This document shows positions 4,146 through 22,124 of a stretch of 64,000 nt of DNA, one piece after another. Both the position numbers and the translations under genes were made by a program. The first letter of the stretch is position 1; each line of letters opens with the position of its first letter. The notes below the pieces were generated by a model that ran no database searches, was not told where the DNA came from, and saw nothing but the letters and a program-made list of their open reading frames with translations. The DNA lies in IMG/VR virus record IMGVR_UViG_3300019776_000324, positions 1 through 64,000 of that record. The stretch is one strand, 5' to 3'.

Positions 4146-5231
4146 ATGTCAGATACAAGAACAGTCAATTCAGTTCAAGCTCGTAAAAGTTTACTGAAAG
4201 CATTCAAAAAACAACGCCCATTATTTTTATGGGGTCCTCCTGGTATTGGTAAGTCAGAGTTGGTTGCTGACTTGACTGAAGAACTAGGTGGTGCTATGAT
4301 CGACCTTCGGTTGGGTCAGATGGAGCCGACAGATATTCGCGGTATTCCTTTTTATAACAAAGATTTGGGCAAGATGGATTGGGCTGAGCCTATCGATTTG
4401 CCAGATGCAGAATTTGCTGGACAGTATCCGATTGTAGTCTTGTTCTTGGACGAGATGAATTCAGCGGCACCATCAGTTCAAGCGGCTGCTTATCAGTTGA
4501 TTTTGAATCGTCGTATTGGCAAGTATAAAATGCCAGACAATGTAGTTATTGTGGCCGCAGGTAATCGCGAGTCAGACAAAGGTGTTACATATCGTATGCC
4601 TACTCCGCTTGCAAATCGTTTCATTCACCAAGAGATGAAGGTAGACTTTGCGGCTTGGCAAGATTGGGCTGTTAACCACGGCATCCATAAAGATGTGGTT
4701 GGTTACTTGACCTACGCTAAACAGGACTTGAATGAGTTCGATGCTAAATCAGCTAGTCGTGCATTCGCTACTCCACGCTCATGGACATTCGTATCACAGT
4801 TGTTAGAAGACGAAGATGGTGATGATGACACTATCATGAACTTGGTTGCAGGCACTGTAGGTGAAGGACTTGCTGTTAAGTTTATGGCACACCGCAAGAT
4901 TGCTGGTAAAATGCCTAAGCCAGAAGATATCTTGGCTGGTAAGGAAAAAGAGCTGAATGTCAAAGAAGTATCGGCTATGTACAGCTTGGTAATCTCCATG
5001 TGCTACGAGCTTAAAGCGGCTGTAGAAGCCAAGGTAGAGGACAAGAAGTTCCATGAAATGGCAGATAACTTCTTTGCCTACATGATGAAGAACTTTGAAA
5101 CTGAACTTGTGGTAATGGGAGCCCGCATAGCACTTACGACCTATAATTTGCCATTCCAACCAACTAAGTTGAAAAACTTTGATGAGTTCCATAAAAGATA
5201 CGGCAAGTATATTTTACAAGCCAGTGCATAG
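4146..5231 (+). CDS. MoxR-like/dynein-related AAA+ ATPase
   Basis: Walker A GPPGIGKS, Walker B LFLDEMN, sensor AAGN, Arg finger 'PLANRF' and 'TPRSW'. Confidence 0.9.
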   Translation: MSDTRTVNSVQARKSLLKAFKKQRPLFLWGPPGIGKSELVADLTEELGGAMIDLRLGQMEPTDIRGIPFYNKDLGKMDWAEPIDLPDAEFAGQYPIVVLFLDEMNSAAPSVQAAAYQLILNRRIGKYKMPDNVVIVAAGNRESDKGVTYRMPTPLANRFIHQEMKVDFAAWQDWAVNHGIHKDVVGYLTYAKQDLNEFDAKSASRAFATPRSWTFVSQLLEDEDGDDDTIMNLVAGTVGEGLAVKFMAHRKIAGKMPKPEDILAGKEKELNVKEVSAMYSLVISMCYELKAAVEAKVEDKKFHEMADNFFAYMMKNFETELVVMGARIALTTYNLPFQPTKLKNFDEFHKRYGKYILQASA

Positions 5232-5465: not shown

Positions 5466-5494
5466 TTGACCTGAAATTAGCTCTATAGTATAAT
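5466..5494 (+). promoter_or_regulatory. Sigma70-type promoter driving the small-ORF array
   Basis: TTGACC-17bp-TATAAT. Confidence 0.8.
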
Positions 5495-5525
5495 AGTGTT
5501 ATCATGTTAAAAACAGGGGCAAATA

Positions 5526-5753
5526 ATGACTAAACTATTAATAGATCGCCTAGATAGATTAACTCTCCTGGTATCTGAATACTATTTTCCTCAATGGATC
5601 GAACAAGGGTATGGAGCACCAAAAGAAAGCTCCTGGCGTCAAATATTTGAATGGTGTTTAGACTGTGGCATTGAGTGTAATAGAGGTCGTGGCACTACCT
5701 TAAGATTTCATAAAGAAACAGATGTTACAGCATTTATGTTAAAGTGGAGTTGA
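5526..5753 (+). CDS. Small FxL[RK]W-family protein
   Basis: Ends DVTAFMLKWS; internal WC motif. Confidence 0.75.
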   Translation: MTKLLIDRLDRLTLLVSEYYFPQWIEQGYGAPKESSWRQIFEWCLDCGIECNRGRGTTLRFHKETDVTAFMLKWS

Positions 5754-5755
5754 AA

Positions 5756-5956
5756 ATGAACTATTTAAGTATAGCACAGATTGATGAAGTAAAGATGGAA
5801 ATGGATGACCTGCTGATACCTATCGCAAAGATTAGTTTAAGTATTCGTCCTGAAGATATACAAAATATGATAATGATGCACGGCCCAGACTTTATGCCAG
5901 AACTACAGCGTATGATTGGCGAAATTGTATTGGATTCTTATAAGACTCAGGATTAA
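5756..5956 (+). CDS. Hypothetical protein
   Basis: ATG 5756 follows a GGAG SD formed by the upstream W-S codons. Confidence 0.65.
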   Translation: MNYLSIAQIDEVKMEMDDLLIPIAKISLSIRPEDIQNMIMMHGPDFMPELQRMIGEIVLDSYKTQD

Positions 5957-6002
5957 ACAGGCTGTGTCGCTACAGCCTTCCACCTTTACTATTATGTTCA
6001 CT

Positions 6003-6332
6003 ATGAAATTTAAAATCGTCAAAACTGATCGTAGGCATACTGCCAATCAAGTATTCCGGTACTATGTTGAGCCTGCATACGAATTAGGTGTTGGCCGTGA
6101 CGAGCGTATTGAAATGTTTAAAGAGTTGCGAGCTTGGTGTTGGGAACAGTTTGGGCCTGGTTGCGAGCGTGATTATGTTGTGCTACACCCGGTTCCTGCG
6201 GGCATAGATGGTCAGTGTCGAATGGCAACTCAAGAGCGTTGGGCTTGGCTTACTACAACTGACACTAATTCGGTGTTGAGAATCTATTTTAACGATGATG
6301 AACTAGCGTGGTTTAAACTCAAGTGGGCATGA
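6003..6332 (+). CDS. Small FxL[RK]W-family protein
   Basis: 'WCWEQFGPG...DDELAWFKLKWA'; start uncertain (5994 or 6003). Confidence 0.75.
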   Translation: MKFKIVKTDRRHTANQVFRYYVEPAYELGVGRDERIEMFKELRAWCWEQFGPGCERDYVVLHPVPAGIDGQCRMATQERWAWLTTTDTNSVLRIYFNDDELAWFKLKWA

Positions 6333-6538
6333 TGATTCGAATTGCCAATTTACAACAGCGTGATGGAATCCATCACTGGCTCAAAGATCGTGGAATCTAT
6401 CGTGATCTTTATGAGTTGGGTTATGACTTTGGTGATTCATCTGACGAGGGCATAGAACTCTGGCCCGTGCTTAGAATCAACGACGGTGTGTTATCAGCAA
6501 CTGATGTAACTGAATTTATATTAAGGTTTGGTGTATGA
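6329..6538 (+). CDS. Small FxL[RK]W-family protein
   Basis: Ends TEFILRFGV; ATGA overlap. Confidence 0.7.
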   Translation: MMIRIANLQQRDGIHHWLKDRGIYRDLYELGYDFGDSSDEGIELWPVLRINDGVLSATDVTEFILRFGV

Positions 6539-6735
6539 CCCAGGTTGAATGTCACATACCTATGAGCCGTATGGAGGAGATTACAGAATGGTTGCACAAC
6601 AACATCGGCCCAGGTTGGATACACCCCGACACACATGTTTGGAGTTATGGTGAGCTGTATGAATCAGTTCATTTTAGCCGTGAACAGGATGCCGTTATGT
6701 TTAAACTAAAATGGGCTGGAAATGAAAACATATAA
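6535..6735 (+). CDS. Small FxL[RK]W-family protein
   Basis: 'WLHNNIGPGW...EQDAVMFKLKWAG'. Confidence 0.75.
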   Translation: MTQVECHIPMSRMEEITEWLHNNIGPGWIHPDTHVWSYGELYESVHFSREQDAVMFKLKWAGNENI

Positions 6736-7075
6736 GCGTACAATTATTATCCGTGAAAGAGATCTTTGTAGTCTAATGTACAAGACTATTAAAAAAGGCC
6801 TGTTTGACCGCATTGATGTAGAACCGTTAACCTATCAAGAAATACAAAACGAAATATTAATAGATACATTAAAGGGCACACCAACTCGTAAGTGGAGTGT
6901 ATTGCCTGATGTGTATGAAACACTAATGTACAAGGAAGGTAACTTGTACAACAAGCAGTATTTGTCCTGGTTGTTGACCATGGATTATCCTAACGGACAG
7001 ATCTATGTGCAGAGCCGTTCAGGCGAACCCACTGATCCTTTACACCGTGTGACTTTTGAGAAAGACTATGCGTAA
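6722..7075 (+). CDS. Hypothetical protein
   Basis: Coupled ORF in array; no motif. Confidence 0.7.
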   Translation: MKTYKRTIIIRERDLCSLMYKTIKKGLFDRIDVEPLTYQEIQNEILIDTLKGTPTRKWSVLPDVYETLMYKEGNLYNKQYLSWLLTMDYPNGQIYVQSRSGEPTDPLHRVTFEKDYA

Positions 7076-7313
7076 ACGCCTACACGAATCTCGTTACTTT
7101 AGACTGCAACAAGAGCACACAGCCAAAGGTCGCAAGTTCTATAGAATTGTATTCTGGAAACTGTGGCCACTGAGCGTAGACGACGAAGAACGAATTAGAG
7201 ATGTAATAGATCCACAGCGTAGCCGAAGTGGTCGAAATGGAACCAATTGGAAATATACTAATCGCAAGGAAGCAGAACAAATGTATAGTATGTTGTTGTT
7301 AAGGTGGAGTTAA
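7068..7313 (+). CDS. Small FxL[RK]W-family protein
   Basis: Ends EAEQMYSMLLLRWS. Confidence 0.7.
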   Translation: MRKRLHESRYFRLQQEHTAKGRKFYRIVFWKLWPLSVDDEERIRDVIDPQRSRSGRNGTNWKYTNRKEAEQMYSMLLLRWS

Positions 7314-7315
7314 AG

Positions 7316-7675
7316 ATGAAACATTATTTGTCATTTATTCAGTGGTTAATTCAGCGTATGTTTCGGACTGTTATATCAGGACCAGTTAGACTTTTTAAAT
7401 GGTATAAAGGTCGACTATATTACGAAACATTTTTAACCATACTGGCATCCATTGTTGGTTGGGCCATGCTGTTATTTGCAGGTGCTGTCGCATCAACTAC
7501 TAATGTTAATGGTAAGTTGGTAGTTGAGACTGATGATGTTTGGCCATTTATAATAGCTTTGTTTGCGCCGCCTGTGGTGTTTATTGTGGCTTGCGTTTCT
7601 ATTCAATATGATCATTACTGTTCAGAGCTAGAGCGCACTATGAAAACTCTTAAAGGCAAGCATGACAGTATATAA
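7316..7675 (+). CDS. Hypothetical membrane protein (2 TM)
   Basis: Two hydrophobic segments; SD comes from upstream AAGGTGGAG. Confidence 0.7.
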   Translation: MKHYLSFIQWLIQRMFRTVISGPVRLFKWYKGRLYYETFLTILASIVGWAMLLFAGAVASTTNVNGKLVVETDDVWPFIIALFAPPVVFIVACVSIQYDHYCSELERTMKTLKGKHDSI

Positions 7676-7865
7676 AGCAAAGATGCCAGAAGCATGGGCT
7701 CGTATGGAATGGTGTCGAGCTCAGTTCGGTGGCGAAGGTGAACCAAATTGGGAAAAGTATGGCGGAGTTGATATTGCCCATGGACTACGCTGGTGGCGTA
7801 GACAAGGCTACTTGTTCTTTCGCAATGAACGAGATTTTGTCCTATACTGTTTGAGGTGGGCATGA
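7662..7865 (+). CDS. Small FxL[RK]W-family protein
   Basis: 'WCRAQFG...ERDFVLYCLRWA'. Confidence 0.75.
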   Translation: MTVYKAKMPEAWARMEWCRAQFGGEGEPNWEKYGGVDIAHGLRWWRRQGYLFFRNERDFVLYCLRWA

Positions 7866-8227
7866 AGATTAAAGAATTTTACCATGAGTTTGAAATGCTA
7901 GTGCGACCAAGTTCACGCAGGTTGCGTCGTATGAAAAATCCTGGATACAGATCCGATGTATGGAATGCCTATATCGATGATTCTATGATATATGACATCA
8001 GTAATGTTGCTGAAGAAGTTGAGTGTGTGGAGGTGCTCATGCCTGCGGACCGTCTTGAAGAGTTGGAACAACTATTAAAACATTATGAAAAAATGGAAGA
8101 ATCGCATCAGCACAGGCATGTTGTTATTAGTAAGCTGAGAGAGGACGAGCGAGTGCGTATTAAAAATCCTGCTGTTCGTCAAGCATGGGAACACTACTTA
8201 ACATTATTAAACTTGTGCAGAGATTAA
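7862..8227 (+). CDS. Hypothetical protein
   Basis: ATGA-coupled; helical C-terminus 'NPAVRQAWEHYLTLLNL'. Confidence 0.7.
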   Translation: MKIKEFYHEFEMLVRPSSRRLRRMKNPGYRSDVWNAYIDDSMIYDISNVAEEVECVEVLMPADRLEELEQLLKHYEKMEESHQHRHVVISKLREDERVRIKNPAVRQAWEHYLTLLNLCRD

Positions 8228-8228
8228 G

Positions 8229-8471
8229 ATGAATAGCAAAGATAGACGCAAAGATCGTAGAGCATGGAAGTATTCTGTAGCTACTCCTCATGTAATGATG
8301 ACTGGAGTTGCGGGCATGCAAGACGAGTATGATGCAATGTGGAACTGGTGCAAGGAAAACTTTGGTAGCGATGCTCGTTACTGTGGATGGCGTGATCGTG
8401 AGTGGGGTGAGCGTTGGGAGTTTAACGACAGTAAGAAAGCTGCACTATTTTCTCTAAGGTGGAGTAGATGA
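8229..8471 (+). CDS. Small FxL[RK]W-family protein
   Basis: 'WCKENFG...KKAALFSLRWSR'; N-terminus is paralogous to 12569. Confidence 0.75.
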   Translation: MNSKDRRKDRRAWKYSVATPHVMMTGVAGMQDEYDAMWNWCKENFGSDARYCGWRDREWGERWEFNDSKKAALFSLRWSR

Positions 8472-8803
8472 AACTAGAACCTTGGCAGGCAGAAGTATTT
8501 GTTAAGTATTGCGAGAATGATATCAAAATGACCATGAATATAGGCCGTCAGACGGGCAAATCAACATGGGTAAGTATGTTAAGGAACTTTATGGAACGAC
8601 CAGAAAAACGATTTCAATTAGTATCGGGAATCTATAACTACTCACTAATGATCGAAGACTACATGTGGTGGGCTGACAATGAGCGTGAAATACTTAACTG
8701 GATGGCGGAGAACTTACCGCGCGGCATTGAACATCAACAGGGCATGATTCTTACATTTGATACAGACAAACAGCGTATGATGTTCTTGTTGAGGTGGGCA
8801 TGA
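8468..8803 (+). CDS. FxL[RK]W-family protein with N-terminal P-loop-like fragment
   Basis: 'LEPWQ...GRQTGKST' then ...QRMMFLLRWA. Confidence 0.7.
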   Translation: MKLEPWQAEVFVKYCENDIKMTMNIGRQTGKSTWVSMLRNFMERPEKRFQLVSGIYNYSLMIEDYMWWADNEREILNWMAENLPRGIEHQQGMILTFDTDKQRMMFLLRWA

Positions 8804-9075
8804 CAGTAAAGTATGTTGACGGTTGGTACGAAATAGAGCATCTCCCGCCTAAAGAGATCTGGGCAGTTCATAGCAAAGAATGGGCATGGAAACCTAGACG
8901 AAATTGGTGTAGGAAAACATTTGCTCCGGGTGAATGGGAAATGCGCGATCCTATATATCATTACAGTATAGGTCCTAGCGGACCCGGTAAACGAATACTA
9001 TCAACTACACCATTAACCTGGCGATTCAAGCGTGAAGCTGATGCCTTGTTGTTTACCTTAAGGTGGGCCAAATGA
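8800..9075 (+). CDS. Small FxL[RK]W-family protein
   Basis: 'WCRKTF...EADALLFTLRWAK'. Confidence 0.75.
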   Translation: MTVKYVDGWYEIEHLPPKEIWAVHSKEWAWKPRRNWCRKTFAPGEWEMRDPIYHYSIGPSGPGKRILSTTPLTWRFKREADALLFTLRWAK

Positions 9076-9353
9076 ATGTTGCTATCCAGCGTGTAACCGA
9101 TATACTTGAAAATTTAATAGCCGAAGAGGCCGCAAAAGAAATGCAAGCAAGTATGGACTATGATGTGCTATGTGAAGTAATGATACCATTTGGTTATACT
9201 GCTGTCCAAATTGAGTACGGCAACAACAAGCGGTGGATTGATGTCATGGCATGGGTGGACAGCAACCGTGTTGGTGATTATCAAGAGCACAAAGGTAAAT
9301 GGTTGTTTAAAAATGAACAAGATGCTATAATGTTTAAGTTGAGGTGGGCCTGA
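9072..9353 (+). CDS. Small FxL[RK]W-family protein
   Basis: Ends EQDAIMFKLRWA. Confidence 0.75.
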   Translation: MNVAIQRVTDILENLIAEEAAKEMQASMDYDVLCEVMIPFGYTAVQIEYGNNKRWIDVMAWVDSNRVGDYQEHKGKWLFKNEQDAIMFKLRWA

Positions 9354-9544
9354 TGTTTGATGAAAAGAATCGTGTTATAGTATTATCCGCTGGCAGTACA
9401 CAACAGGAGAAACTTGATTGGTGTTGTGATCATTTGGCAGGAACGGTTATGTGCCATCCTATCACTTACGGTCTTGATGATGCTGAGATATGGTATTTTG
9501 AAACGGGTGAAGAATCTACTATGTTTGCGTTAAGGTGGGCATGA
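9353..9544 (+). CDS. Small FxL[RK]W-family protein
   Basis: 'WCCDHLAG...EESTMFALRWA'; TGATG overlap. Confidence 0.75.
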   Translation: MFDEKNRVIVLSAGSTQQEKLDWCCDHLAGTVMCHPITYGLDDAEIWYFETGEESTMFALRWA

Positions 9545-9780
9545 AGATAGAAACTACATGGGATAACCTTAATAAGGTCCCTTGGACAGCAATTAACCGA
9601 GCTGGTGACTATTATCATACGCATGTTAGATCTACAAAGGGTGCTTTCATTGATAGATTAAAGGCCGGTGCCGAATATAGCGCCTGGATGCGAAACAATT
9701 GGGGAATACACCACGAGCCTTTGGAATTCAAAATAGTCGATGAGAAAAAATACACCATGTTCTTGTTGAGGTGGGCATGA
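9541..9780 (+). CDS. Small FxL[RK]W-family protein (DEKKY subtype)
   Basis: Ends IVDEKKYTMFLLRWA. Confidence 0.75.
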   Translation: MKIETTWDNLNKVPWTAINRAGDYYHTHVRSTKGAFIDRLKAGAEYSAWMRNNWGIHHEPLEFKIVDEKKYTMFLLRWA

Positions 9781-10007
9781 AAGTAAAGAAAACCGATCCA
9801 ACCTTGTTTGTTGATCCGTATGGAGAAGCCAAACAGAAGTTGTTGAACCGAGGCTATGTTGCTATACCAGTGACTAAGAATCATAACTGGACCGGCATTC
9901 ATGAATGGTGCAAACAATATCTACACTTTGACTACACCTGGTTTGGTTTAGAATTTTGGTTTGCTGACGAACAAGATGCTGTGTTATTTCAGTTGAGGTG
10001 GGCATAA
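9777..10007 (+). CDS. Small FxL[RK]W-family protein
   Basis: 'WCKQY...EQDAVLFQLRWA'. Confidence 0.75.
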   Translation: MKVKKTDPTLFVDPYGEAKQKLLNRGYVAIPVTKNHNWTGIHEWCKQYLHFDYTWFGLEFWFADEQDAVLFQLRWA

Positions 10008-10177
10008 TGTCACTTAATCAAGATTATGCAGTTTCGTGTAAAAACATAACCAACGACCAATGGAACTGGTTGTGCAATACCATAGGAACTCCTACAAAAG
10101 ATTGGCACTATAACTTTGCACATATTTGGTTCTATAAAGAAGAACATAAGACTCTTTGGCTGTTGAGGTGGGCATAA
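10007..10177 (+). CDS. Small FxL[RK]W-family protein (56 aa, missing from ORF track)
   Basis: Translated by hand: MSLNQDYAVSCKNITNDQWNWLCNTIGTPTKDWHYNFAHIWFYKEEHKTLWLLRWA; TAATG overlap. Confidence 0.75.
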   Translation: MSLNQDYAVSCKNITNDQWNWLCNTIGTPTKDWHYNFAHIWFYKEEHKTLWLLRWA

Positions 10178-10178
10178 C

Positions 10179-10427
10179 ATGGCACAATTTTATCAAGGAC
10201 CACACTTTTGGGACAAGAGTACTTACGAAGTTACTGTAAAGACTACTCGGTATCGCGTTCGCCAAGTGTGGATTGATGATATGATCAAGTGGGCTAAAGA
10301 ACGAGAAATAAGCATTCACTGGCAAGGCGAAAGCACTCATGTCCACAACGATGATGAATGGCACGAAGCACACTTCTGCATTTACGACAGCAATGATCGT
10401 ATGTTATTTGCGTTGAGGTGGGCATGA
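10179..10427 (+). CDS. Small FxL[RK]W-family protein
   Basis: Ends NDRMLFALRWA. Confidence 0.75.
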   Translation: MAQFYQGPHFWDKSTYEVTVKTTRYRVRQVWIDDMIKWAKEREISIHWQGESTHVHNDDEWHEAHFCIYDSNDRMLFALRWA

Positions 10428-10723
10428 GTCTATCAAATCAAGCAAAGAATATAAAAGGTCACATGGATCTGTTTCCAGAAAAGTGGAACGATAACCGTGC
10501 CAAACGAGATAGATTTTGGGCGATGTTAAGACGGGTCAAATCAGACTATTTTACCCTAGTCAAAGATTTGGGCAACGATCCCGACGATGGAAGTTTTTAT
10601 ACATACATGCAGGATACCTATGGTATAAAACTAATATTAACAAACCGTGGTGAGATCACAGACATGTTTGAAGTTACAGATGAAAAGAAACAAATGATGT
10701 TTATTTTAAAATACGGATCATGA
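10424..10723 (+). CDS. FxL[RK]W-family protein (DEKK subtype)
   Basis: 'YGIKL...DEKKQMMFILKYGS'. Confidence 0.75.
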   Translation: MSLSNQAKNIKGHMDLFPEKWNDNRAKRDRFWAMLRRVKSDYFTLVKDLGNDPDDGSFYTYMQDTYGIKLILTNRGEITDMFEVTDEKKQMMFILKYGS

Positions 10724-10944
10724 TTAGAGTTAGTACCAAAGACGAAGCGTTTATGCAAGCATATCACAATGCTCGTCGTGCCTTACCGGTTGAAACTCTA
10801 GAAAGCCCCAGGCAGTATGGTGCTCGCTGGCGAGAAACATATTGTTGCAGAGTAGATGCAAACGGAAATAATAAGATAGACGAAACTTATTATGTCTTTG
10901 ACAACGATGAAGATTACACTTGGTTTATGTTACGATGGGGTTAA
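10720..10944 (+). CDS. Small FxL[RK]W-family protein
   Basis: Ends EDYTWFMLRWG. Confidence 0.75.
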   Translation: MIRVSTKDEAFMQAYHNARRALPVETLESPRQYGARWRETYCCRVDANGNNKIDETYYVFDNDEDYTWFMLRWG

Positions 10945-11159
10945 AGATCGCTGTCAAAGATTCAGCCGAAGCATTTGGCCTTAAAATGGAAGTAGACCGT
11001 CATGGCCTGCGTCCTGGTGCAGGATATACTTGGCGTTATACTCCAGCGGTAAGAGATTACTTTGGCCTCATAGCCGAAGAAGAGGATGTGGCTCGAGTAG
11101 AGTTTGAGTTTGACGATCCAAAGTGGGCAACATATTTTCAATTACGGTGGGCACAATGA
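10935..11159 (+). CDS. Small FxL[RK]W-family protein
   Basis: Ends PKWATYFQLRWAQ; start uncertain. Confidence 0.7.
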   Translation: MGLKIAVKDSAEAFGLKMEVDRHGLRPGAGYTWRYTPAVRDYFGLIAEEEDVARVEFEFDDPKWATYFQLRWAQ

Positions 11160-11470
11160 CAACTACAACAGTATATAATCTAGCAGATGGTAGTGTAGTA
11201 GAGCTAAAAACCAATCCAGGTGCAGCACCTATTGTATTCCTTAATGGTGTTATACAACAACCTGGAACTTATTCCTTGTCAGGAACAAATGTCATATTTG
11301 ATACACCGCAAAAAACATGGCAATGGCAACAGCATTATGCTTGGTTACCAAAGCGCATTAATGGTAAGTGGTATTGGTTTACTTATGTTTATCGTTACTG
11401 GTGTCTATCGCCTGGCGGAGGATTTTGGCGATATGGCGACGACTTTGACAAATTAAAGGACACCAAATGA
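11156..11470 (+). CDS. Chimeric hypothetical protein (virion-type beta repeat plus Trp-rich domain)
   Basis: 'VFLNGVIQQPGTYSLSGTNVIF' then 'WQQHYAWLPKRINGKWYW'. Confidence 0.65.
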   Translation: MTTTTVYNLADGSVVELKTNPGAAPIVFLNGVIQQPGTYSLSGTNVIFDTPQKTWQWQQHYAWLPKRINGKWYWFTYVYRYWCLSPGGGFWRYGDDFDKLKDTK

Positions 11471-11724
11471 GTTGGAAACCCATGGTAGACTATGAAGAAT
11501 CGGTTCCTCTAAAGCGTCGAGCAACCAAGAAAAAGGTTTGGGATGAATTGACTCAAACCTGGAAAGATGCTACAATATGGACTGTAATCTATAATCGTGA
11601 GCTAAAGGATTGGTTAGAAGAGACCTATCCTGGCAAGCAAGGGTGGGGCACTGCCTGGAGCGATAGCAAGATTATCATGGAAGAACCAGTTTACTTACAT
11701 TATTGTTTAAAGTTTGGAGCATGA
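11467..11724 (+). CDS. Small FxL[RK]W-family protein
   Basis: Ends VYLHYCLKFGA. Confidence 0.7.
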   Translation: MSWKPMVDYEESVPLKRRATKKKVWDELTQTWKDATIWTVIYNRELKDWLEETYPGKQGWGTAWSDSKIIMEEPVYLHYCLKFGA

Positions 11725-11951
11725 TGTCACCTTGGGAATACTTACGCGAGTGGAATCTAATGGAAAAGCCGGATTCACGCCGAGCCAGTAGAGAGTGGAT
11801 CAATCAAGAAATGCAGAGTCACTGGCCAGGTCCGTATCGTGTGGAACGATGCCAATCACGCTATGCTGGCACAGGTTGGCGTATTGATTACGAGATTAAA
11901 TTTGCGGATCCTCAAGAAGAAACAATGTTTAGATTAAAGTTTGGAGCATAA
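11721..11951 (+). CDS. Small FxL[RK]W-family protein
   Basis: Ends EETMFRLKFGA. Confidence 0.7.
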   Translation: MMSPWEYLREWNLMEKPDSRRASREWINQEMQSHWPGPYRVERCQSRYAGTGWRIDYEIKFADPQEETMFRLKFGA

Positions 11952-12334
11952 TGGATAGAGATTTAGAAGACGATCTTAAGAACGATGCCTTGGTCATGGA
12001 AAAGATCAAGGATCGTCGCTATGCTCAAAATGTCTATGCCGCACTGTGCAACATGCGTTGGCAACCTGAGGAAGTATGGCCTGTGCTCACTGATGAATAC
12101 TGGTCATGTAGTTGGCGCAGTGCTGGTGGGCTTGTAGCTGATCTTAGAGTTGACTTTAATGAAGATTACATGGATTGGTATTGTTCAGGTATTAGTGGAG
12201 GATTTGATTTTGAATCTGATGACGAAGAGCGTAATAAAGGATATGTTGCAGAAGGGGAAGTAACAGATGAAATTCGTGAAGATTTTGCTCGCTTGGGTTG
12301 GCATCCAAGTCCATGGCCTAAAGACGAGGTATAA
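11951..12334 (+). CDS. Hypothetical protein
   Basis: 'YAQNVYAALCN...WSCSWRSAGGLVA...YMDWYCSG'. Confidence 0.75.
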   Translation: MDRDLEDDLKNDALVMEKIKDRRYAQNVYAALCNMRWQPEEVWPVLTDEYWSCSWRSAGGLVADLRVDFNEDYMDWYCSGISGGFDFESDDEERNKGYVAEGEVTDEIREDFARLGWHPSPWPKDEV

Positions 12335-12338
12335 TAAT

Positions 12339-12572
12339 ATGTTTGTTAAAGATGTTGAAAAAATGATTATCGGCAGTTTAAAAGAAGTTATGAAGGATCG
12401 CAATCTTTTTTATAACTCAACTGTGGGGCCGGAGTACTGTCACTTAACCAACGAGGGTGCAAAGGCTATTACTGACATGTGTAATGTCTTACTACCTAGG
12501 TTGCTTAAAGCACAAGAGCTAGAAGATATTGAACGCAGTAAAATGATAGTTATGCAAGAACTTAAAAAATGA
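12339..12572 (+). CDS. Hypothetical protein
   Basis: ATG 12339 follows a GAGGT SD. Confidence 0.7.
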   Translation: MFVKDVEKMIIGSLKEVMKDRNLFYNSTVGPEYCHLTNEGAKAITDMCNVLLPRLLKAQELEDIERSKMIVMQELKK

Positions 12573-12835
12573 ACAGTCACGACCGTAGAGTTGTAGAGCG
12601 AGCATGGCCACACCATGTTTATCTGCACGATGGTGACAGTTTAGTTGAAGATTGTTTTGAATGGTTACACACAAATTTTGGTTCATGCCGTTGGACTGGC
12701 AAGCGCAATCCGCGCTGGTGCTGGCGTCCAGATATGGGTCAAGGCCCTAACTTTGTTATAATGCGACATGGTGTAGAAATATTCTTCCGTAAGAAAGAAG
12801 ATTACGCTTGGTTTATGTTAAAGTGGGATAGATGA
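12569..12835 (+). CDS. Small FxL[RK]W-family protein
   Basis: 'WLHTNFG...EDYAWFMLKWDR'. Confidence 0.75.
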   Translation: MNSHDRRVVERAWPHHVYLHDGDSLVEDCFEWLHTNFGSCRWTGKRNPRWCWRPDMGQGPNFVIMRHGVEIFFRKKEDYAWFMLKWDR

Positions 12836-13116
12836 ATTACTATTACGAAATTAGTGAAAAGTATGATGGCACTGTGTTTGGCGACCGGTGGCGTTACTGG
12901 TGCTTGGCCAACTGTAGCCCAGCTGAAGGTGGCAAAATGTGTTTTAAAACACACGACGAGTTTGTAGCTCGTAGCAGTCGTGTATGGTTAGAAAATGCCA
13001 ATGGTGTTTATCAAATCAAGCCCGACTGGTATGGCATGCGTGGGCAAGTGGATCCACATGAGTTTACTATGATTAAACTAAAATCACGAGTGTATAAATG
13101 GTGGTACGATGAATGA
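12832..13116 (+). CDS. Hypothetical protein (degenerate FxLK motif)
   Basis: 'HEFTMIKLKSR' near the C-terminus. Confidence 0.7.
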   Translation: MNYYYEISEKYDGTVFGDRWRYWCLANCSPAEGGKMCFKTHDEFVARSSRVWLENANGVYQIKPDWYGMRGQVDPHEFTMIKLKSRVYKWWYDE

Positions 13117-13450
13117 TGATGACATAAAAGCCTTGCATAACAAGCTACGAGGTTACAGCAAACAACTACCTGGGCAAGCCGGCGACGAATACTATGAAAG
13201 TCAGGCCGCTAGATTAGATACTATCATAGGTGGCGACACTGGCCACTTCCAACGCTTGCAACGAGTACGCAACGAATGGGACGAGCTAGCTAGAGCTGTG
13301 CCTGTTGGACAAGGTTTCTTAACATTCTACGACTATGTAAAAGAGTACTATGGTATCAAACTAATGTATGACGGCGATGATCTAAAGTTAGAATATAGTA
13401 TTATAGACGAAAAGAAGTACACTGTGTTCTTATTGAAGTTTGATAGATAA
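13109..13450 (+). CDS. FxL[RK]W-family protein (DEKKY subtype)
   Basis: 'YGIKL...IIDEKKYTVFLLKFDR'. Confidence 0.75.
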   Translation: MNDDDIKALHNKLRGYSKQLPGQAGDEYYESQAARLDTIIGGDTGHFQRLQRVRNEWDELARAVPVGQGFLTFYDYVKEYYGIKLMYDGDDLKLEYSIIDEKKYTVFLLKFDR

Positions 13451-13704
13451 TGCATATAAACAATTTTACTTTACCTACTCCGCCGCAGGAATTACTAGAC
13501 AAGTGTATTCAAGTTGCATTTGATGGTGAGGGCCGGTTTATGAGTAAAATGCGCCGCTGGTGTTACGATCATACAGAATCATTTGTATGGGCAGATCGTA
13601 TTGACATGAGCGATAGTAGCTACTGGACCGGCCCGGATGATTATGTAGTGTTTTATTTTTATAAAGAAATTGATGCTACACTATTTAGATTAAAGTGGCT
13701 ATGA
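13450..13704 (+). CDS. Small FxL[RK]W-family protein
   Basis: 'WCYDH...EIDATLFRLKWL'. Confidence 0.75.
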   Translation: MHINNFTLPTPPQELLDKCIQVAFDGEGRFMSKMRRWCYDHTESFVWADRIDMSDSSYWTGPDDYVVFYFYKEIDATLFRLKWL

Positions 13705-13925
13705 TTGATCGTAATCCACTGTTAACCATTCCTGTAAAAACCTACGCTCATTATAGTGAGTGCGAACCTTGGCTGTTGGCCAATGTAGGTGGCTGGAATG
13801 ACTTATGGTGGAGAGATTTTCAAGATGTTGCTATGCATGTGGCCTTAGGCGAAGGAACACAACCAGACTGCTATTGGTTTTGTCGTGAACAAGATGCCTT
13901 GATGTTTAGGTTAAAATTTCAATGA
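13701..13925 (+). CDS. Small FxL[RK]W-family protein
   Basis: 'WLLANVG...EQDALMFRLKFQ'. Confidence 0.75.
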   Translation: MIDRNPLLTIPVKTYAHYSECEPWLLANVGGWNDLWWRDFQDVAMHVALGEGTQPDCYWFCREQDALMFRLKFQ

Positions 13926-14143
13926 TATGGTCCATGATCATTGCCAAGGTCTTGACTACAGTGATGTCGTGGTTAGATGCTGGCAATCTACGCAACAAGG
14001 TTTACAAGCAGGCTGAAGAAGCAGAAATCATGATGACTGCCTTAGAAGATATTGAACGCATGAGCAAGGAAGACCGGATCAAACACTATGCTCGTACAGC
14101 AATTAACACAGTAAAAGGATTGCCCATTGAAGACGACTATTAA
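13922..14143 (+). CDS. Hypothetical protein
   Basis: ATGA-coupled ORF. Confidence 0.7.
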   Translation: MIWSMIIAKVLTTVMSWLDAGNLRNKVYKQAEEAEIMMTALEDIERMSKEDRIKHYARTAINTVKGLPIEDDY

Positions 14144-14468
14144 GCACAACTTGATTATCTTTCATCGTCCTAAAGAGTGGGATGAACTACAACAACGATT
14201 AATAGATGAATATGGTCGTAGTGTTATTCTGGTTCGAGACAAGTGTCGTCGTGAGCTGGGATTTACTCCCCGCCATCACAGGGGTTTAATTCCTTACCTA
14301 GACAAATGGGGACACGGCGTGGTAAGAAACTCTGGTGCTACCAAAGAGCAAGCTGACAAGTTTATTGCAGAAAATAAACACAAAATGGCCTACGACAATC
14401 AGGTACATTTAGACTTCTATAGCGAAGCAGCAATGAGCTGGTTTGTGCTAAAATATCTTAATGACTAG
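14127..14468 (+). CDS. FxL[RK]W-family protein
   Basis: Ends EAAMSWFVLKYLND; TTG start after AAGGA. Confidence 0.7.
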   Translation: MKTTIKHNLIIFHRPKEWDELQQRLIDEYGRSVILVRDKCRRELGFTPRHHRGLIPYLDKWGHGVVRNSGATKEQADKFIAENKHKMAYDNQVHLDFYSEAAMSWFVLKYLND

Positions 14469-14471
14469 CGG

Positions 14472-14500
14472 TTGACCAGAAATTCCATTTCGGTTATAAT
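14472..14500 (+). promoter_or_regulatory. Sigma70-type promoter (probable leaderless mRNA)
   Basis: TTGACC-17bp-TATAAT; ATG is 6 nt downstream and has no SD. Confidence 0.8.
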
Positions 14501-14506
14501 AGTAGT

Positions 14507-14797
14507 ATGAAAGTGATTAAATTAGACCGAAGATACGCCGGCTTTCCTAAGTGGAAGTATGCCTGCCAATTTCCTGTAAGAAATCACAATTATCGAAAAG
14601 AATATTTTAACTACGTTCGGACATTTAAAGAATTGTTTGGTGCAGAATCTCAGTCAAACCCTGACCGTAATACCGGCGATTGGTCTAAGCCTTTTTGGAT
14701 TTATAACGAGCACTGGTGCACTGACTTTCCTAAACAGCGAATTCTTGTTAAAGATCAAGCGGTTATAAGCATGATCATGCTGAAAATGCCCGGTTGA
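14507..14797 (+). CDS. Hypothetical protein (degenerate family member)
   Basis: Starts 'MKVIKLDRR' like 6003 ('MKFKIVKTDRR'); ends SMIMLKMPG. Confidence 0.7.
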   Translation: MKVIKLDRRYAGFPKWKYACQFPVRNHNYRKEYFNYVRTFKELFGAESQSNPDRNTGDWSKPFWIYNEHWCTDFPKQRILVKDQAVISMIMLKMPG

Positions 14798-15143: not shown

Positions 15144-15172
15144 TTGACCAAATAATCCATTTATAGTATAAT
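15144..15172 (+). promoter_or_regulatory. Sigma70-type promoter
   Basis: TTGACC-17bp-TATAAT-AGTTGTATAGT. Confidence 0.85.
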
Positions 15173-15200
15173 AGTTGTATAGTTAATAAAAGGAGCCCAT

Positions 15201-15583: not shown

Positions 15584-16867
15584 ATGACCACTAGCACACA
15601 AAACAAAAAAGAATCAGACAAGTTTAAAAACTTATTGGGTCCGACTAACCCTAAAGTTGATGCAGATGTTCGTGAGAAGTTGATTACTGCTCGTGTGGGC
15701 TTGTTACTTCGTGCAAGTTTCTTTGGTAACTTGGCTACTCGCTTAAAGTTAGTCAATGCTGATGAATGGTGTCCAACAGCCGCAACTGATGGTCGTCACT
15801 TTTACTACAATACCCGTTTCGTAAACATGCTCAAGCCAAAAGAGATTGAGTTCTTGTTTGGTCATGAGGTCTTGCACTGTGTTTACGATCACTTTGGCCG
15901 TCGTGGCGATCGTGACCATCAACTGTTTAACATTGCCAATGACTATTGCGTAAACGCAGACTTGAAGAAACATCGTGTGGGCGAGTTTATTACATCAGTA
16001 CCTTGCTTGTACGATGCCAAGTACGAAGGTATGAGTTCAGAAGAGATTTATGATCTCTTGTATGAAAATGCTGAAAAGATCAATATCAGTGATTTGATTG
16101 ACAAATTGCTCGATGATCACTTGGATGGTAATGGTGACGGGGAAGGTGAAGATGGCGATGAGAAAGATGGCAAAGGCAAGGGTCGCCCTAAACTAAGCGC
16201 AGAAGAGCGTCAACAGATCAAAGATGAGATCAAAGAAGCTGTATTGGCTGCGGCTGCCGCTAGCGACGGTGCAGGTAACTTGCCAGCAGGTGTCAAGCGT
16301 ATCATTGAAGATATGACTGCACCTAAAATGAACTGGCGCGAGTTGTTGCGTATGCAATTAGAGTCAACTATCAAGACTGACTACACTTGGATGCGCTCTA
16401 GCCGTAAAGGCTGGCACATGGATGCTATTATGCCTGGACAGAAGTTTGATGAGCTTATTGATATTGCTGTTAGTATTGACGCTTCAGGCAGTATGGGCGA
16501 AGCTATGCTCAAAGATATCTTGTCAGAAGTGCAAGGTATTGTAGACAGTTTCCCAGCTTACAAACTGCACATTGTATCGTTTGATACTCAGATTTACAAT
16601 CCACAGACTTACGACAGTGAGAACTTGGACAATCTAGTAGACTACGAAATCCACGGTGGTGGCGGTACAGACTTTGATTGTGTGTTTGAATACTTCAAAG
16701 AAAATGACATCCAACCCAAGCGTCATATCATGTTTACTGACGGTTACCCATGTGGTAGTTGGGGTGATGAGAACTACTGTGATACTGTGTTTATCATGCA
16801 CGGTACTACTAGCATTGTTCCACCGTTTGGTCAGTACGCTTACTATGAGGAAGAAAAGAGTCACTAA
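15584..16867 (+). CDS. DUF2201-type metallopeptidase plus vWA-domain protein (MoxR partner)
   Basis: 'TAATDG', HEXXH 'HEVLH', acidic/Gly linker, MIDAS 'DASGSM', 'GGGGTDF' and 'FTDG'. Confidence 0.85.
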   Translation: MTTSTQNKKESDKFKNLLGPTNPKVDADVREKLITARVGLLLRASFFGNLATRLKLVNADEWCPTAATDGRHFYYNTRFVNMLKPKEIEFLFGHEVLHCVYDHFGRRGDRDHQLFNIANDYCVNADLKKHRVGEFITSVPCLYDAKYEGMSSEEIYDLLYENAEKINISDLIDKLLDDHLDGNGDGEGEDGDEKDGKGKGRPKLSAEERQQIKDEIKEAVLAAAAASDGAGNLPAGVKRIIEDMTAPKMNWRELLRMQLESTIKTDYTWMRSSRKGWHMDAIMPGQKFDELIDIAVSIDASGSMGEAMLKDILSEVQGIVDSFPAYKLHIVSFDTQIYNPQTYDSENLDNLVDYEIHGGGGTDFDCVFEYFKENDIQPKRHIMFTDGYPCGSWGDENYCDTVFIMHGTTSIVPPFGQYAYYEEEKSH

Positions 16868-21749: not shown

Positions 21750-21767
21750 ACATAATTCTGCTATAAT
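21739..21767 (+). promoter_or_regulatory. Sigma70-type promoter (probable leaderless mRNA)
   Basis: TTGTAA-17bp-TATAAT; ATG is 6 nt downstream. Confidence 0.6.
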
Positions 21768-21773
21768 AGCAGT

Positions 21774-22124
21774 ATGTTCAAGGCCATAAACGAATTGCAT
21801 CCGAGAAATCGTTCTGCTGAAGCAGACAAACTGTTCAAAGCACCAGAGTGGCGACTTGTTGACGATAAAGCTGTTAAGTTTTCGGATGTAATGGTTCATT
21901 CGTTCAACATGGGCGATGTAGAAGATCCAGATCTATATGCTGCACAACCCATTATGGAATGGCAGAACAGCGAAGCAGGACAATGGGTTATAGAACATGC
22001 TGTGGAGAAACCCTTCTGGCATCGTGTGTTGAGTCCTTACACTTATGGATGGACATATTATATTGTAGCTCGACTTGCTGAGCAAGATCAAACATACTGG
22101 ACACTTAAATGGCAAAAATCTTAG
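21774..22124 (+). CDS. Distant FxL[RK]W-family protein
   Basis: 'GDVEDPDLYAAQPI...EQDQTYWTLKWQKS'. Confidence 0.7.
   Translation: MFKAINELHPRNRSAEADKLFKAPEWRLVDDKAVKFSDVMVHSFNMGDVEDPDLYAAQPIMEWQNSEAGQWVIEHAVEKPFWHRVLSPYTYGWTYYIVARLAEQDQTYWTLKWQKS

What the first reader, a model, noticed from the sequence alone, without database searches (positions are those of the whole stretch)
5526..14797. Tandem array of 25+ small, highly divergent proteins sharing a C-terminal [FYW]-x-L-[RK]-[WFY] tag
Seen: 35 short co-oriented, overlapping ORFs (56-127 aa). 25 end within 0-7 residues of one motif, e.g. FMLKWS, FKLKWA, YCLRWA, FSLRWSR, FLLRWA (twice), FTLRWAK, FKLRWA, FALRWA (twice), FQLRWA, WLLRWA, FILKYGS, FMLRWG, YCLKFGA, FRLKFGA, FMLKWDR, FLLKFDR, FRLKWL, FRLKFQ, FVLKYLND. 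The motif is usually preceded by 'F..E.DA' and often by an upstream 'W[CL]...[FIV]G'. Twelve members are consecutive (8229-11159). N-terminal halves are mostly unalignable by eye, with subtypes (DEKKY: 9541, 10424, 13109; MNS.DRR: 8229, 12569). Inference: this is a large paralog expansion with a constant docking end and variable business end, as expected for a diversified effector or adaptor repertoire (anti-defence, host takeover or substrate adaptors) expressed early from the 5466 promoter. I cannot name a characterised family for it.
Basis: partly seen in the sequence, partly recalled or inferred. Interest (0 to 1): 0.92.

Follow-up and report, generated by a model that had tools for sequence, protein, structure and literature searches.

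The report
Tandem small-protein family in jumbo phage
A freshwater giant phage carries about 26 copies of an uncatalogued small protein in one early operon. The shared C-terminal F-x-L-R/K-W ending is the last turn of a conserved fold and also encodes the ribosome-binding site of the next gene. The function is unknown; a repertoire of host-directed binding proteins is my best guess.

Summary
25 of 35 co-oriented small genes in 5526-14797 end in [FYWL]-x-L-[RK]-[WFY], and one more lies at 21774-22124. Shuffles give 0.2 by chance; the minus strand has none.

It is a real protein family. An HMM built only from unrelated metagenome sequences, with L[RK]W removed, finds 15 members and no false hits. 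AlphaFold gives one compact beta-alpha-beta-beta-alpha fold (pLDDT 84) with no PDB relative. Pfam, PHROGs and NCBIfam have no model. About 512 clusters exist in public data, nearly all small proteins whose matched domain runs to the C-terminus.

The motif is dual-coded. L-R-W-A reads TTG AGG TGG GCA TGA, which holds a Shine-Dalgarno sequence and an ATGA start overlap. AGG is 12 of 14 motif Arg codons against 1.7% elsewhere.

The array lies behind a near-consensus sigma-70 promoter, between a MoxR ATPase and a metallopeptidase-vWA gene. In a syntenic 342-kb scaffold the flanks are 92-96% identical but family orthologues only 41-90%, and 10 of 26 have none.

Function is not shown. I infer a diversified set of non-enzymatic early binders for host takeover or anti-defence. 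In other phages some members carry major-capsid-protein fragments at the N-terminus.

The parts
5466..5494 (+). Sigma-70-like promoter (TTGACC-17-TATAAT, 11 of 12) in front of the array. It belongs to a repeated promoter family with 14472 and 15144.
   Evidence: repeat family D5
5526..14468 (+). Array as a whole: 34 co-oriented genes, mostly joined by ATGA or TAATG overlaps. No equally strong internal promoter and no good + strand terminator. Inferred to be a single early polycistron of about 9 kb.
5526..5753 (+). family member, ends FMLKWS
5994..6332 (+). family member, ends FKLKWA (start uncertain: 5916, 5964 or 5994)
6329..6538 (+). family member by motif only, ends FILRFGV
6535..6735 (+). 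family member, ends FKLKWAGNENI
7068..7313 (+). family member, ends LLLRWS. Its closest relative is L008:7678-8004.
7662..7865 (+). family member, ends YCLRWA
8229..8471 (+). family member, ends FSLRWSR (MNS.DRR subtype)
8468..8803 (+). family member, ends FLLRWA
8800..9075 (+). family member, ends FTLRWAK
9072..9353 (+). family member, ends FKLRWA
9353..9544 (+). family member, ends FALRWA
9541..9780 (+). family member, ends FLLRWA (DEKKY subtype)
9777..10007 (+). family member, ends FQLRWA. Modelled by AlphaFold2 (pLDDT 84).
10007..10177 (+). family member, ends WLLRWA. At 56 aa it is the shortest, essentially the bare core.
10179..10427 (+). family member, ends FALRWA
10424..10723 (+). family member, ends FILKYGS (DEKK subtype)
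10720..10944 (+). family member, ends FMLRWG
10935..11159 (+). family member, ends FQLRWAQ
11467..11724 (+). family member by motif and orthology, ends YCLKFGA. The SD is supplied by GGAG in the Gly-Ala codons.
11721..11951 (+). family member, ends FRLKFGA
12569..12835 (+). family member, ends FMLKWDR (MNS.DRR subtype)
13109..13450 (+). family member, ends FLLKFDR (DEKKY subtype)
13450..13704 (+). family member, ends FRLKWL
13701..13925 (+). family member, ends FRLKFQ
14127..14468 (+). family member, ends FVLKYLND. It is the last gene before the next promoter and has no SD in its motif codons.
21774..22124 (+). Outlying family member, ends YWTLKWQKS (start inferred). Its orthologue is at L001:18997-19371.
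12832..13116 (+). Possible degenerate member (…EFTMIKLKSRVYKWWYDE). Not detected by the independent HMM.
14507..14797 (+). Possible degenerate member (…AVISMIMLKMPG) behind its own promoter at 14472. Not detected by the independent HMM.
4146..5231 (+). Left flank: MoxR-like AAA+ ATPase. 51% identical to the Pseudomonas jumbo phage PA5oct ATPase and 96% to L001.
15584..16867 (+). Right flank: DUF2201_N metallopeptidase plus VWA-like domain. 92% identical to L001.

Best explanation
The region is a single early operon of a freshwater T4-related jumbo phage. It is driven by a host-type sigma-70 promoter and holds about 26 anciently diverged paralogues of one uncatalogued small-protein family.

Each protein is built on a core of about 55-60 residues with beta-alpha-beta-beta-alpha topology. 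The conserved residues are the W..WC...FG helix, a Trp in strand 2, the F.F strand and the E.DA..F.L[RK]W C-terminal helix. These are mostly aromatic or aliphatic and appear to hold the fold together. No catalytic-looking polar set is conserved.

What differs between paralogues is the N-terminal extension, the helix-to-strand loop and the surface charge. I therefore read the proteins as non-enzymatic binding modules with different specificities, made at the start of infection. The most likely roles are to bind and neutralise or redirect host proteins (host takeover, anti-defence), or to bind phage proteins.

The C-terminal motif does two jobs. As protein it is the last turn of the C-terminal helix. 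As RNA its preferred codons (TTG AGG TGG NNA TGA) form the Shine-Dalgarno sequence and the overlapping start of the next cistron. The array is thus a translationally coupled chain, and every copy brings the ribosome-binding site for whatever lies downstream.

Shown: family membership, fold prediction, codon bias, junction design, synteny, fast turnover under purifying selection. Inferred: early timing, single transcript, burial of the conserved residues, binding function. Not shown: any target.
For: Motif enrichment: 25 observed against 0.21 expected.

Protein-level homology without the SD-coded residues: an external-only HMM with L[RK]W removed finds 15 window members at E<1e-3 and nothing else among 554 ORFs. 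In a leave-one-out test 10 of 26 members rank first of 844 sequences.

Fold: two AlphaFold2 models, one of a window member and one of an unrelated metagenome member, both have pLDDT about 84. They share beta-alpha-beta-beta-alpha topology with the motif inside the last helix. The best BFVD matches are uncharacterised phage proteins at TM 0.74.

Dual coding: 12 of 14 motif Arg codons are AGG, against 9 of 541 in large ORFs of the window. Across five loci of at least four lineages AGG is 37 of 47 motif Arg codons, and an ATGA overlap occurs at 46 of 76 junctions.

The protein constraint comes first. R/K and W/F/Y exchanges break the SD but keep the residue class. In F-G-A endings the SD moves to GGAG. 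The motif persists where no coupled gene follows (14468, 22124).

Real genes under selection: dN/dS is 0.07-0.41 for the 12 family orthologue pairs where dS could be estimated. dN is 0.05-0.48 over all 16 family pairs, against 0.04-0.06 for the flanks.

Fast turnover: flanks are 96% and 92% identical, family orthologues 41-90%, and 10 of 26 have no orthologue in L001.

Variable surfaces: pI ranges from 4.4 to 10.5.

Early operon: 11-of-12 promoters at 5466 and 14472, and nothing as strong between them.

Recurrence: arrays also occur in L001 (18 hits), L003 (8), L007 (8) and L008 (20). There are 512 clusters at 50% identity in 1.84 billion representatives.
Against: There is no functional evidence of any kind. 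No RNA data were found, no target is known, and no similarity to any characterised anti-defence or host-takeover protein was found. PADLOC was not searched. Pfam, PHROGs, NCBIfam and PDB were negative.

About ten window members are recognised only with the motif included, or by orthology.

dN/dS stays below 1, so positive selection, which an arms-race role would predict, is not demonstrated. dS is near saturation.

Several subtypes are conserved across distant lineages. That fits conserved housekeeping-like partners as well as it fits defence targets.

Promoter and operon structure rest on consensus scans only.

Burial of the conserved residues is inferred from the helix pattern and secondary structure, not measured on coordinates.
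Confidence: 0.55

Rival explanations
1. The family are clients, adaptors or regulators of the flanking MoxR AAA+ and metallopeptidase-vWA pair. They might be substrate adaptors that bring different proteins to the chaperone/protease, or a set of pro-proteins processed by it.
For: The array lies exactly between the two genes in the window and in the syntenic scaffold L001. In Agrobacterium phage Atu_ph07 two probable distant members (gp258, gp255) lie 3.8-5 kb downstream of the same pair. The MoxR-vWA pair is proposed to act as a chaperone/peptidase in group 2.2 jumbo phages (PMC7824862).
Against: In Atu_ph07 the two genes are adjacent with nothing between them. This suggests the array is an insertion into a permissive site. 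Arrays in L003/L004, L007 and L008 have no MoxR or DUF2201 gene within the 6-16 kb fetched. The ATPase and the vWA gene each have their own strong promoter (4066 and 15527). PA5oct has the ATPase but no family member within the 29 kb examined.
Confidence: 0.12
2. The shared ending is only a by-product of a repeated gene junction (Shine-Dalgarno plus ATGA start), and the ORFs are otherwise unrelated.
For: The motif codons spell GAGGTGG followed by an ATGA overlap. AGG is strongly over-used there. A 32-nt junction is 97% identical between 8780-8811 and 9757-9788.
Against: Homology is detected with L[RK]W removed, using an HMM built from unrelated sequences and in a leave-one-out test. Two members share a predicted fold. 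K (AAA/AAG) and F/Y variants keep the residue class while destroying the SD. The motif is kept where no gene follows. In L001 4 of 11 motif Arg codons are CGN.
Confidence: 0.02
3. The proteins are tied to the capsid. They could be packaged internal proteins injected with the DNA, like T4 internal proteins, or modulators or decoys of capsid-protein recognition and assembly.
For: In other phages members carry N-terminal pieces of the T4-type major capsid protein above Pfam's threshold. One piece aligns to T4 gp23 residues 86-135 (E 4e-11) and another to residues 256-302 (E 4e-9). Both types occur in the same array. Hypervariability resembles that of T4 internal-protein loci (my knowledge, not tested here).
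Against: No window member has a capsid fragment or any shared N-terminal targeting sequence. The array sits behind an early-type sigma-70 promoter, not with the structural genes on the other strand. The capsid pieces are not the gp23 propeptide.
Confidence: 0.1
4. The array is largely selfish or near-neutral. A cassette that carries its own downstream ribosome-binding site can be duplicated or inserted into operons at little cost, so copies accumulate without each having a distinct function.
For: Every copy supplies the SD and start for the next gene. Junction microhomology includes one 32-nt near-identical pair. Gene order is rearranged and there is much gain and loss between close relatives. 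dN is much higher than in the flanks.
Against: dN/dS is 0.07-0.41 for every orthologue pair that could be measured. No pseudogenised copies with internal stops were seen. Individual subtypes are kept across distant phage lineages.
Confidence: 0.1
5. The domain binds nucleic acid, and the members are regulators of transcription or translation during takeover.
For: The fold is a small alpha/beta two-layer domain. The weak structural neighbours include RNA-binding and ribosomal proteins. Some members are basic, with pI above 9.
Against: All PDB matches have E>0.4 and TM of 0.55 or less. About half of the members are acidic. No conserved basic patch or helix-turn-helix is present. The only conserved charged positions are E, D and one R/K.
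Confidence: 0.08

Closest known systems
Lineage-specific expansions of small domains in jumbo phages, e.g. about 35 zinc-ribbon copies in Bacillus phage G (Iyer et al. 2021, PMC7824862)
   Same: Dozens of copies of one small domain in a single giant-phage genome, with unknown but probably binding or regulatory roles.
   Different: The fold is unrelated, there are no metal ligands, and the copies are tandem in one coupled operon. Subtypes here are shared with distant lineages rather than expanded in one phage.
Hyperplastic early-gene regions of T4-type phages and T4 internal-protein loci (my knowledge)
   Same: Small, fast-turning-over genes in T4-related phages, expressed from host-type promoters, with a suspected role in host adaptation and anti-restriction.
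   Different: Those regions hold unrelated ORFs, many with their own promoter. Here one family is chained behind one promoter. No family member was found in the first 50 kb of T4, and tblastn with three members found none in 50,697 phage records.
Tandem 'polyimmunity' arrays of diversified small immunity proteins (e.g. SUKH/Imm families) in bacteria (my knowledge)
   Same: Tandem arrays of divergent paralogues of a small non-enzymatic alpha/beta binding domain. A conserved core carries variable surfaces.
   Different: No sequence or fold similarity was found. The setting is a phage early operon and no toxin gene is nearby.
Anti-defence loci (anti-CRISPR and similar)
   Same: Small, early, strongly promoted, rapidly exchanged genes without database annotation.
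   Different: Acr loci hold unrelated families and usually an Aca regulator. Nothing here matches a known anti-defence protein, and no activity was tested.
beta-alpha-beta-beta-alpha modules such as secretin N-domains / ring-building motifs and ferredoxin-like thiamine-binding (YkoF/MTH1187) domains
   Same: Same order of secondary-structure elements. The structural neighbours in the ESM Atlas have TM 0.45-0.54.
   Different: The scores are at the level expected for any small alpha/beta sandwich. Foldseek against PDB gives E>0.4. No sequence signal.
Ordinary translational coupling with an SD inside the upstream gene and an ATGA overlap
   Same: Same mechanism at each junction.
   Different: Here the SD is written into the family-defining residues and recurs at dozens of junctions in several phage lineages.

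Membership tests
Any Pfam-A / PHROGs / NCBIfam family | Profile match at or above the curated or usual significance threshold | tested here: not met
   20 window members were scanned against Pfam and 10 against PHROGs. 83 external members were scanned against Pfam, PHROGs and NCBIfam. Only scattered chance-level hits appeared.
Any protein of known structure | Sequence-profile or fold match to a PDB chain | tested here: not met
   The profile against PDB sequences gave a best E of 0.4. Foldseek of two models gave best E values of 0.41 and 0.74 with TM of 0.55 or less.
VOC / glyoxalase beta-alpha-beta-beta-beta module | Significant profile match and paired modules with metal-binding residues | tested here: not met
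   Only two weak hits: 3ct8 at E 0.4 and PF06983 at E 0.21. The domain is single and no conserved His/Glu metal ligands appear in A1 or A2.
T4-type internal (injected) proteins | Shared N-terminal capsid-targeting sequence with a prohead-protease site | tested here: not met
   The N-termini of the 26 members do not align. No shared N-terminal motif was seen.
T4-type internal (injected) proteins | Presence in virions | not testable with these tools
   This needs virion proteomics of a cultured carrier.
The new family itself (F-x-L-[RK]-W small proteins) | Core W..WC...FG helix, F.F strand and E.DA..F.L[RK]W terminal helix, detectable by an HMM built from non-orthologous members | tested here: met
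   15 window members were found at E<1e-3 with the tail removed. 24 were found at E<0.01 with the full model, which includes window sequences.
The new family itself | Common predicted fold | tested here: met
   Only two members were modelled. Both show beta-alpha-beta-beta-alpha. BFVD relatives match at TM 0.74.
Anti-defence proteins | Inhibition of a defined defence system | not testable with these tools
   This needs expression against defence-system panels. PADLOC holds defence proteins rather than inhibitors and was not searched.

The most novel reading that the evidence does not exclude
The domain may be a portable 'bait-display' scaffold of large aquatic phages. Its constant core would present a variable N-terminal peptide early in infection. 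In some phages that peptide is a piece of the phage's own type of major capsid protein, including the most conserved gp23 stretch. That stretch probably corresponds to the Gol peptide, which binds EF-Tu and triggers the Lit defence protease. The array would then be a battery of decoys or competitive inhibitors that pre-empt host sensors of phage structural proteins and other targets. In addition, because the terminal helix doubles as a ribosome-binding site, the family would spread as self-sufficient, translationally coupled cassettes.
Probability: 0.15. Interest if true: 0.85.

Novelty: new variant of a known kind. Interest (0 to 1): 0.7.

Why it matters
Giant phages carry hundreds of unannotated small early genes. 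This is where new anti-defence and host-takeover functions keep being found.

Here roughly two dozen such genes in one genome, and at least 512 clusters in public data, collapse into a single fold. That fold has no solved relative and no database model, so one structure and a few binding screens would annotate a large block of viral dark matter.

The family also gives an unusually clear case of dual coding. The residues that define it are constrained both by the fold and by the ribosome-binding site of the next gene. That explains why the domain sits at the very C-terminus and why the copies chain so tightly.

The capsid-fragment fusions in related arrays offer a concrete hypothesis to test, namely decoys for capsid-sensing immunity.

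Tried and rejected
- **Megablast against GenBank phages:** the 9.6-kb region gave no match among 50,697 records.
- **tblastn against the same set:** three members gave no match.
- **Family libraries:** Pfam, PHROGs and NCBIfam gave nothing for members. Pfam and PHROGs gave nothing useful for the ten interspersed non-family genes.
- **Solved structures:** the PDB profile search and Foldseek on two models gave only chance-level hits. I considered the weak glyoxalase/VOC and forkhead hits and dropped them.
- **ESM Atlas:** only unnamed viral clusters.
- **The search for related loci with alignment A2:** I therefore sampled contexts through the look-up of encoding contigs.
- **The search for homologous proteins with A1:** only 8 hits, all unnamed.
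- **PA5oct:** the 29 kb around its ATPase holds no family member.
- **T4:** the first 50 kb holds none. The rest of T4 was not scanned.
- **RNA evidence:** no RNA run holds the region.
- **Own-protein fragments:** I tested whether window members carry fragments of proteins encoded elsewhere in the window. They do not.
- **Positive selection:** not demonstrable, because dS is near saturation.
- **Literature:** searches found no description of the family.
- **C-terminal degron or PDZ-type tag:** judged unlikely. The motif lies inside a confidently predicted helix. Tandem two-domain fusions also exist in which the first motif is internal (P0003, P0012, P0089, P0105).

Full report

Yes. The + strand of 5526-14797 holds 35 short co-oriented ORFs that overlap or abut. 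A regular-expression scan of all stop-to-stop ORFs of at least 50 aa found the motif [FYW]-x-L-[RK]-[WFY] within 0-7 residues of the C-terminus in 25 of 202 + strand ORFs. It found none in 147 minus-strand ORFs.

Twenty-four of the 25 lie in the region and one lies at 21756-22124. The gene 7068-7313 ends in LLLRWS and brings the region to 25 members.

Shuffling each ORF gives a mean of 0.21 hits (maximum 3 in 2000 trials). 25 of the 26 occurrences of the motif anywhere in these ORFs are C-terminal.

These are a helix 'W..W[CL]...FG', a strand 'h.h.F' and 'E.DA..F.L[RK]W'.

**2. Protein family, or a repeated gene junction?**

The codons of the ending are typically TTG AGG TGG GCA TGA. GAGGTGG is a Shine-Dalgarno sequence. 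GCATGA contains the ATG of the next gene overlapping the stop.

AGG is the rarest Arg codon in the window: 9 of 541 in 23 large ORFs, and 5 of 135 in the bodies of the family genes. Yet it encodes 12 of the 14 motif arginines. So the ribosome-binding site of the next cistron is written into the motif.

This does not explain the family away. Four tests say so.

- I built an HMM from 70 metagenome sequences that are not orthologues of window genes, with L[RK]W and the tail cut off. It finds 15 window members at E<1e-3 and nothing else among 554 ORFs on both strands.
- In a leave-one-out test using window members only, with the whole five-residue motif removed, 10 of 26 members rank first among 844 sequences.
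- Substitutions keep the residue class but break the SD. Examples are K (AAA/AAG) for R, and F/Y (TTT/TAC/TAT) for W. In the F-G-A endings the SD is supplied by GGAG in the Gly-Ala codons instead.
- The motif is kept where no coupled gene follows (14468 and 22124). In the related scaffold 4 of 11 motif arginines use CGN codons.

My reading is that the protein constraint comes first and codon choice within it is tuned to make an SD. The same design holds in five loci from at least four phage lineages. AGG is 37 of 47 motif Arg codons, and an ATGA overlap occurs at 46 of 76 junctions. The final codon ends in A wherever the ATGA overlap is used, which goes with the varying last residue.

**3. Fold**

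AlphaFold2 on member 9777-10007 with A1 as alignment gave pLDDT 84. It predicts an N-terminal helix followed by beta-alpha-beta-beta-alpha.

An unrelated metagenome member (P0029), modelled with an alignment of 83 external sequences, gave pLDDT 84.7 and the same beta-alpha-beta-beta-alpha core.

In both models the motif lies in the last turns of the C-terminal helix at high confidence. It is part of the fold, not a free tail.

The near-invariant positions in the external alignment are W, W, F, F, L and W. No conserved polar set suggests catalysis.

Foldseek against PDB found nothing significant for either model, with best E values of 0.41 and 0.74. A profile search of PDB sequences found nothing either.

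Against BFVD the best matches are uncharacterised proteins of uncultured phages (TM 0.74). One protein of Agrobacterium phage Atu_ph07 also matches.

The ESM Atlas returns only unnamed viral clusters. Its nearest named structural neighbours are secretin N-domains and YkoF-like domains at TM 0.45-0.54.

**4. How widespread is it?**

A profile search of 1.84 billion representative proteins found 512 clusters at E<=1e-3. Among the 150 best hits nearly all are 58-125 aa, with the domain running to the C-terminus.

150 of the 158 proteins on file end in the relaxed motif. LRW occurs 102 times and LKW 38 times.

None of Pfam, PHROGs or NCBIfam has a model for the family. Source names, where given, are 'hypothetical protein'.

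tblastn with three members found nothing in 50,697 GenBank phage records. The family HMM does detect two probable distant members in Atu_ph07, gp258 and gp255. It finds none in the first 50 kb of T4.

**5. Genomic context and evolution**

The window comes from a freshwater metagenome phage. Its MoxR-like ATPase is 51% identical to that of the Pseudomonas jumbo phage PA5oct. The MoxR plus metallopeptidase-vWA pair is a known feature of group 2.2 jumbo phages (PMC7824862).

A 342-kb lake-metagenome scaffold (L001) is syntenic. It has the ATPase, an array with 18 HMM hits, and then DUF2201-vWA.

The flanks are 96% and 92% identical. Family orthologues are only 41-90% identical. 10 of 26 window members have no orthologue there, and the left half of the array is rearranged.

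Of the 16 family pairs, dN/dS could be estimated for 12 and is 0.07-0.41. The other four have saturated dS. dN is 0.05-0.48 across all 16 family pairs, against 0.04-0.06 for the flanks, and exceeds 0.25 in eleven of them. These are therefore real genes under purifying but relaxed or shifting constraint.

Window paralogues are at most about 35% identical to each other over alignments of 50 or more residues. Several have clearly better matches in arrays of other lineages:

| Window member | Better match in another lineage |
|---|---|
| 7068 | L008:7678-8004 |
| 11721 | L007:1651-1908 |
| 14127 | L008:9587-9817 |
| 21774 | L007:2457-2855 |

The expansion is therefore old, and arrays are mosaics of long-lived subtypes.

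Other lineages also carry arrays. L003/L004 has 8 members, 7 of them consecutive. L007 has 8 members in 6.3 kb. L008 has 20 members in 16.4 kb.

**6. Expression signals**

Near-consensus sigma-70-type sites (11 of 12 matches) lie at 5466 and 14472. The best site between them scores 10 of 12, at 11548. No convincing + strand terminator lies inside the array.

Together with the overlapping starts, this suggests one early polycistron of about 9 kb with translational coupling. That is an inference from consensus scans. No RNA run holding the region was found.

**7. Likely mechanism**

The conserved positions look structural. The variable parts are the N-terminal extension, the helix-to-strand loop and the surface charge, with pI from 4.4 to 10.5.

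The domain is too small for catalysis and has too few conserved polar residues. I therefore favour a repertoire of non-enzymatic binders made at the start of infection.

However, the constant end is the fold core plus a ribosome-binding site, not a docking tag.

What the proteins bind is unknown. Host takeover or anti-defence is the most plausible class, given early placement, rapid turnover and lack of annotation. Nothing here tests it.

**8. A lead from related arrays**

Several longer members in other phages carry an N-terminal piece of the T4-type major capsid protein. The matches are above Pfam's gathering score.

- One type aligns to T4 gp23 residues 86-135 (E 4e-11). This is the '…IAFDICGVQPM…' stretch. 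A review calls the Gol region, a 29-residue segment in the first quarter of gp23, the most conserved part of the protein. It is also the trigger of the Lit/EF-Tu exclusion system (PMC3014915). That these residues are exactly the Gol peptide is my recollection, not a test.
- A second member of the same array (L008:11217-11549) carries a different piece, gp23 residues 256-302 (E 4e-9).

These genes sit inside family arrays, not beside capsid genes. No window member carries such a fragment.

This suggests, but does not show, that the variable N-terminus can act as a displayed peptide or decoy.

**9. Rivals**

- **Adaptor or client of the MoxR-vWA pair.** This is possible. It is weakened by Atu_ph07, where the two genes are adjacent. 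It is also weakened by arrays with no such genes in the stretches fetched.
- **Pure junction artefact.** Rejected.
- **Packaged internal proteins.** This fits the capsid fragments. It does not fit the promoter type or the lack of a shared N-terminal signal.
- **Near-neutral self-propagating cassette.** This fits the portable ribosome-binding site and a 32-nt near-identical junction pair. It does not fit the dN/dS values or the persistence of subtypes.
- **Nucleic-acid binding.** This lacks support.

**10. Verdict**

This is a real, large and uncatalogued family with a confident but unsolved fold. It has an unusual dual-coded terminus, and its function is unknown.

The general kind is known: expansions of small early proteins in giant phages. 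This family, its junction design and the capsid-fragment variants were not described in any library or paper I could search.

Noticed in passing
L008:8001-8375, L008:11217-11549, L007:1116-1481 (also P0117, P0093, P0149, P0024): In other phage contigs some family members carry N-terminal fragments of the T4-type major capsid protein. One type aligns to gp23 residues 86-135, the 'GVQPM' stretch that is probably the Gol region. Another aligns to gp23 residues 256-302. Both types lie within one array.
   Followed up: partly
window 8780-8811 and 9757-9788: A 32-nt gene junction (ATGTTCTTGTTGAGGTGGGCATGA.AGTAAAG) is 97% identical between two otherwise dissimilar gene pairs. This is a possible footprint of junction-mediated recombination or cassette shuffling. 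Gene order in the left half of the array differs from L001.
   Followed up: partly
window 5466-5502, 14472-14508, 15144-15180 (also 3664, 4066, 14794, 15527): A family of near-identical extended promoters (TTGACC…TATAGTATAATAGT) is repeated on the + strand of the early region.
   Followed up: partly
window 11156-11470 and L001:10940-11407: Window gene 11156-11470 is not a family member. Its N-terminus weakly resembles a tail-fibre PHROG and DUF4183 (E 4e-4 and 2e-3). The L001 ORF at the corresponding place ends in …YIATRWAE and may be a family domain with a long N-terminal extension. Pfam found nothing in it.
   Followed up: partly
window 11951-12334: Very acidic 127-aa protein (net charge -17, pI 4.2) inside the array. 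It is 72-73% identical in L001 and has no family match. It could be a DNA-mimic-type protein, but this was not tested.
   Followed up: no
window 47769-61925 (minus strand): A single 4718-aa ORF, followed by a 681-aa ORF at 61925-63970. This is presumably a giant structural or fibre protein of the jumbo phage.
   Followed up: no
window 2721-3620; L008:13123-15026: Tripartite tricarboxylate transporter genes occur in phage contigs next to these early regions: TctC in the window and TctB/TctA in L008. This is an unusual auxiliary metabolic cargo shared by two family-bearing lineages.
   Followed up: no
window 521-612: ARAGORN calls a 92-nt tRNA-Pro (anticodon AGG). It lies inside the 132-1103 ORF and is unusually long, so it may be a false call or an intron-containing tRNA.
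   Followed up: no
P0002, P0011, P0043 (metagenome proteins): Long repeat proteins (416-1176 aa) match only the 'NWC..NFGDKE.WERR' helix part of the profile, 4-5 times each. They are probably unrelated repeat proteins that share a short helix motif.
   Followed up: no
P0091: A 163-aa protein has a YmdB-like phosphoesterase C-terminal part (E 4e-48) directly followed by a family domain. It could be a fusion or a gene-calling run-through. Metallophos genes also flank the arrays in L003, L004 and L008.
   Followed up: no
window 6722-7075: This non-member ends …HRVTFEKDYA, which resembles the 'h.F..E.DA' element just before where the motif would come. It starts MKTY…. It is 80% identical in L001, with the same truncated-looking end.
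   Followed up: no
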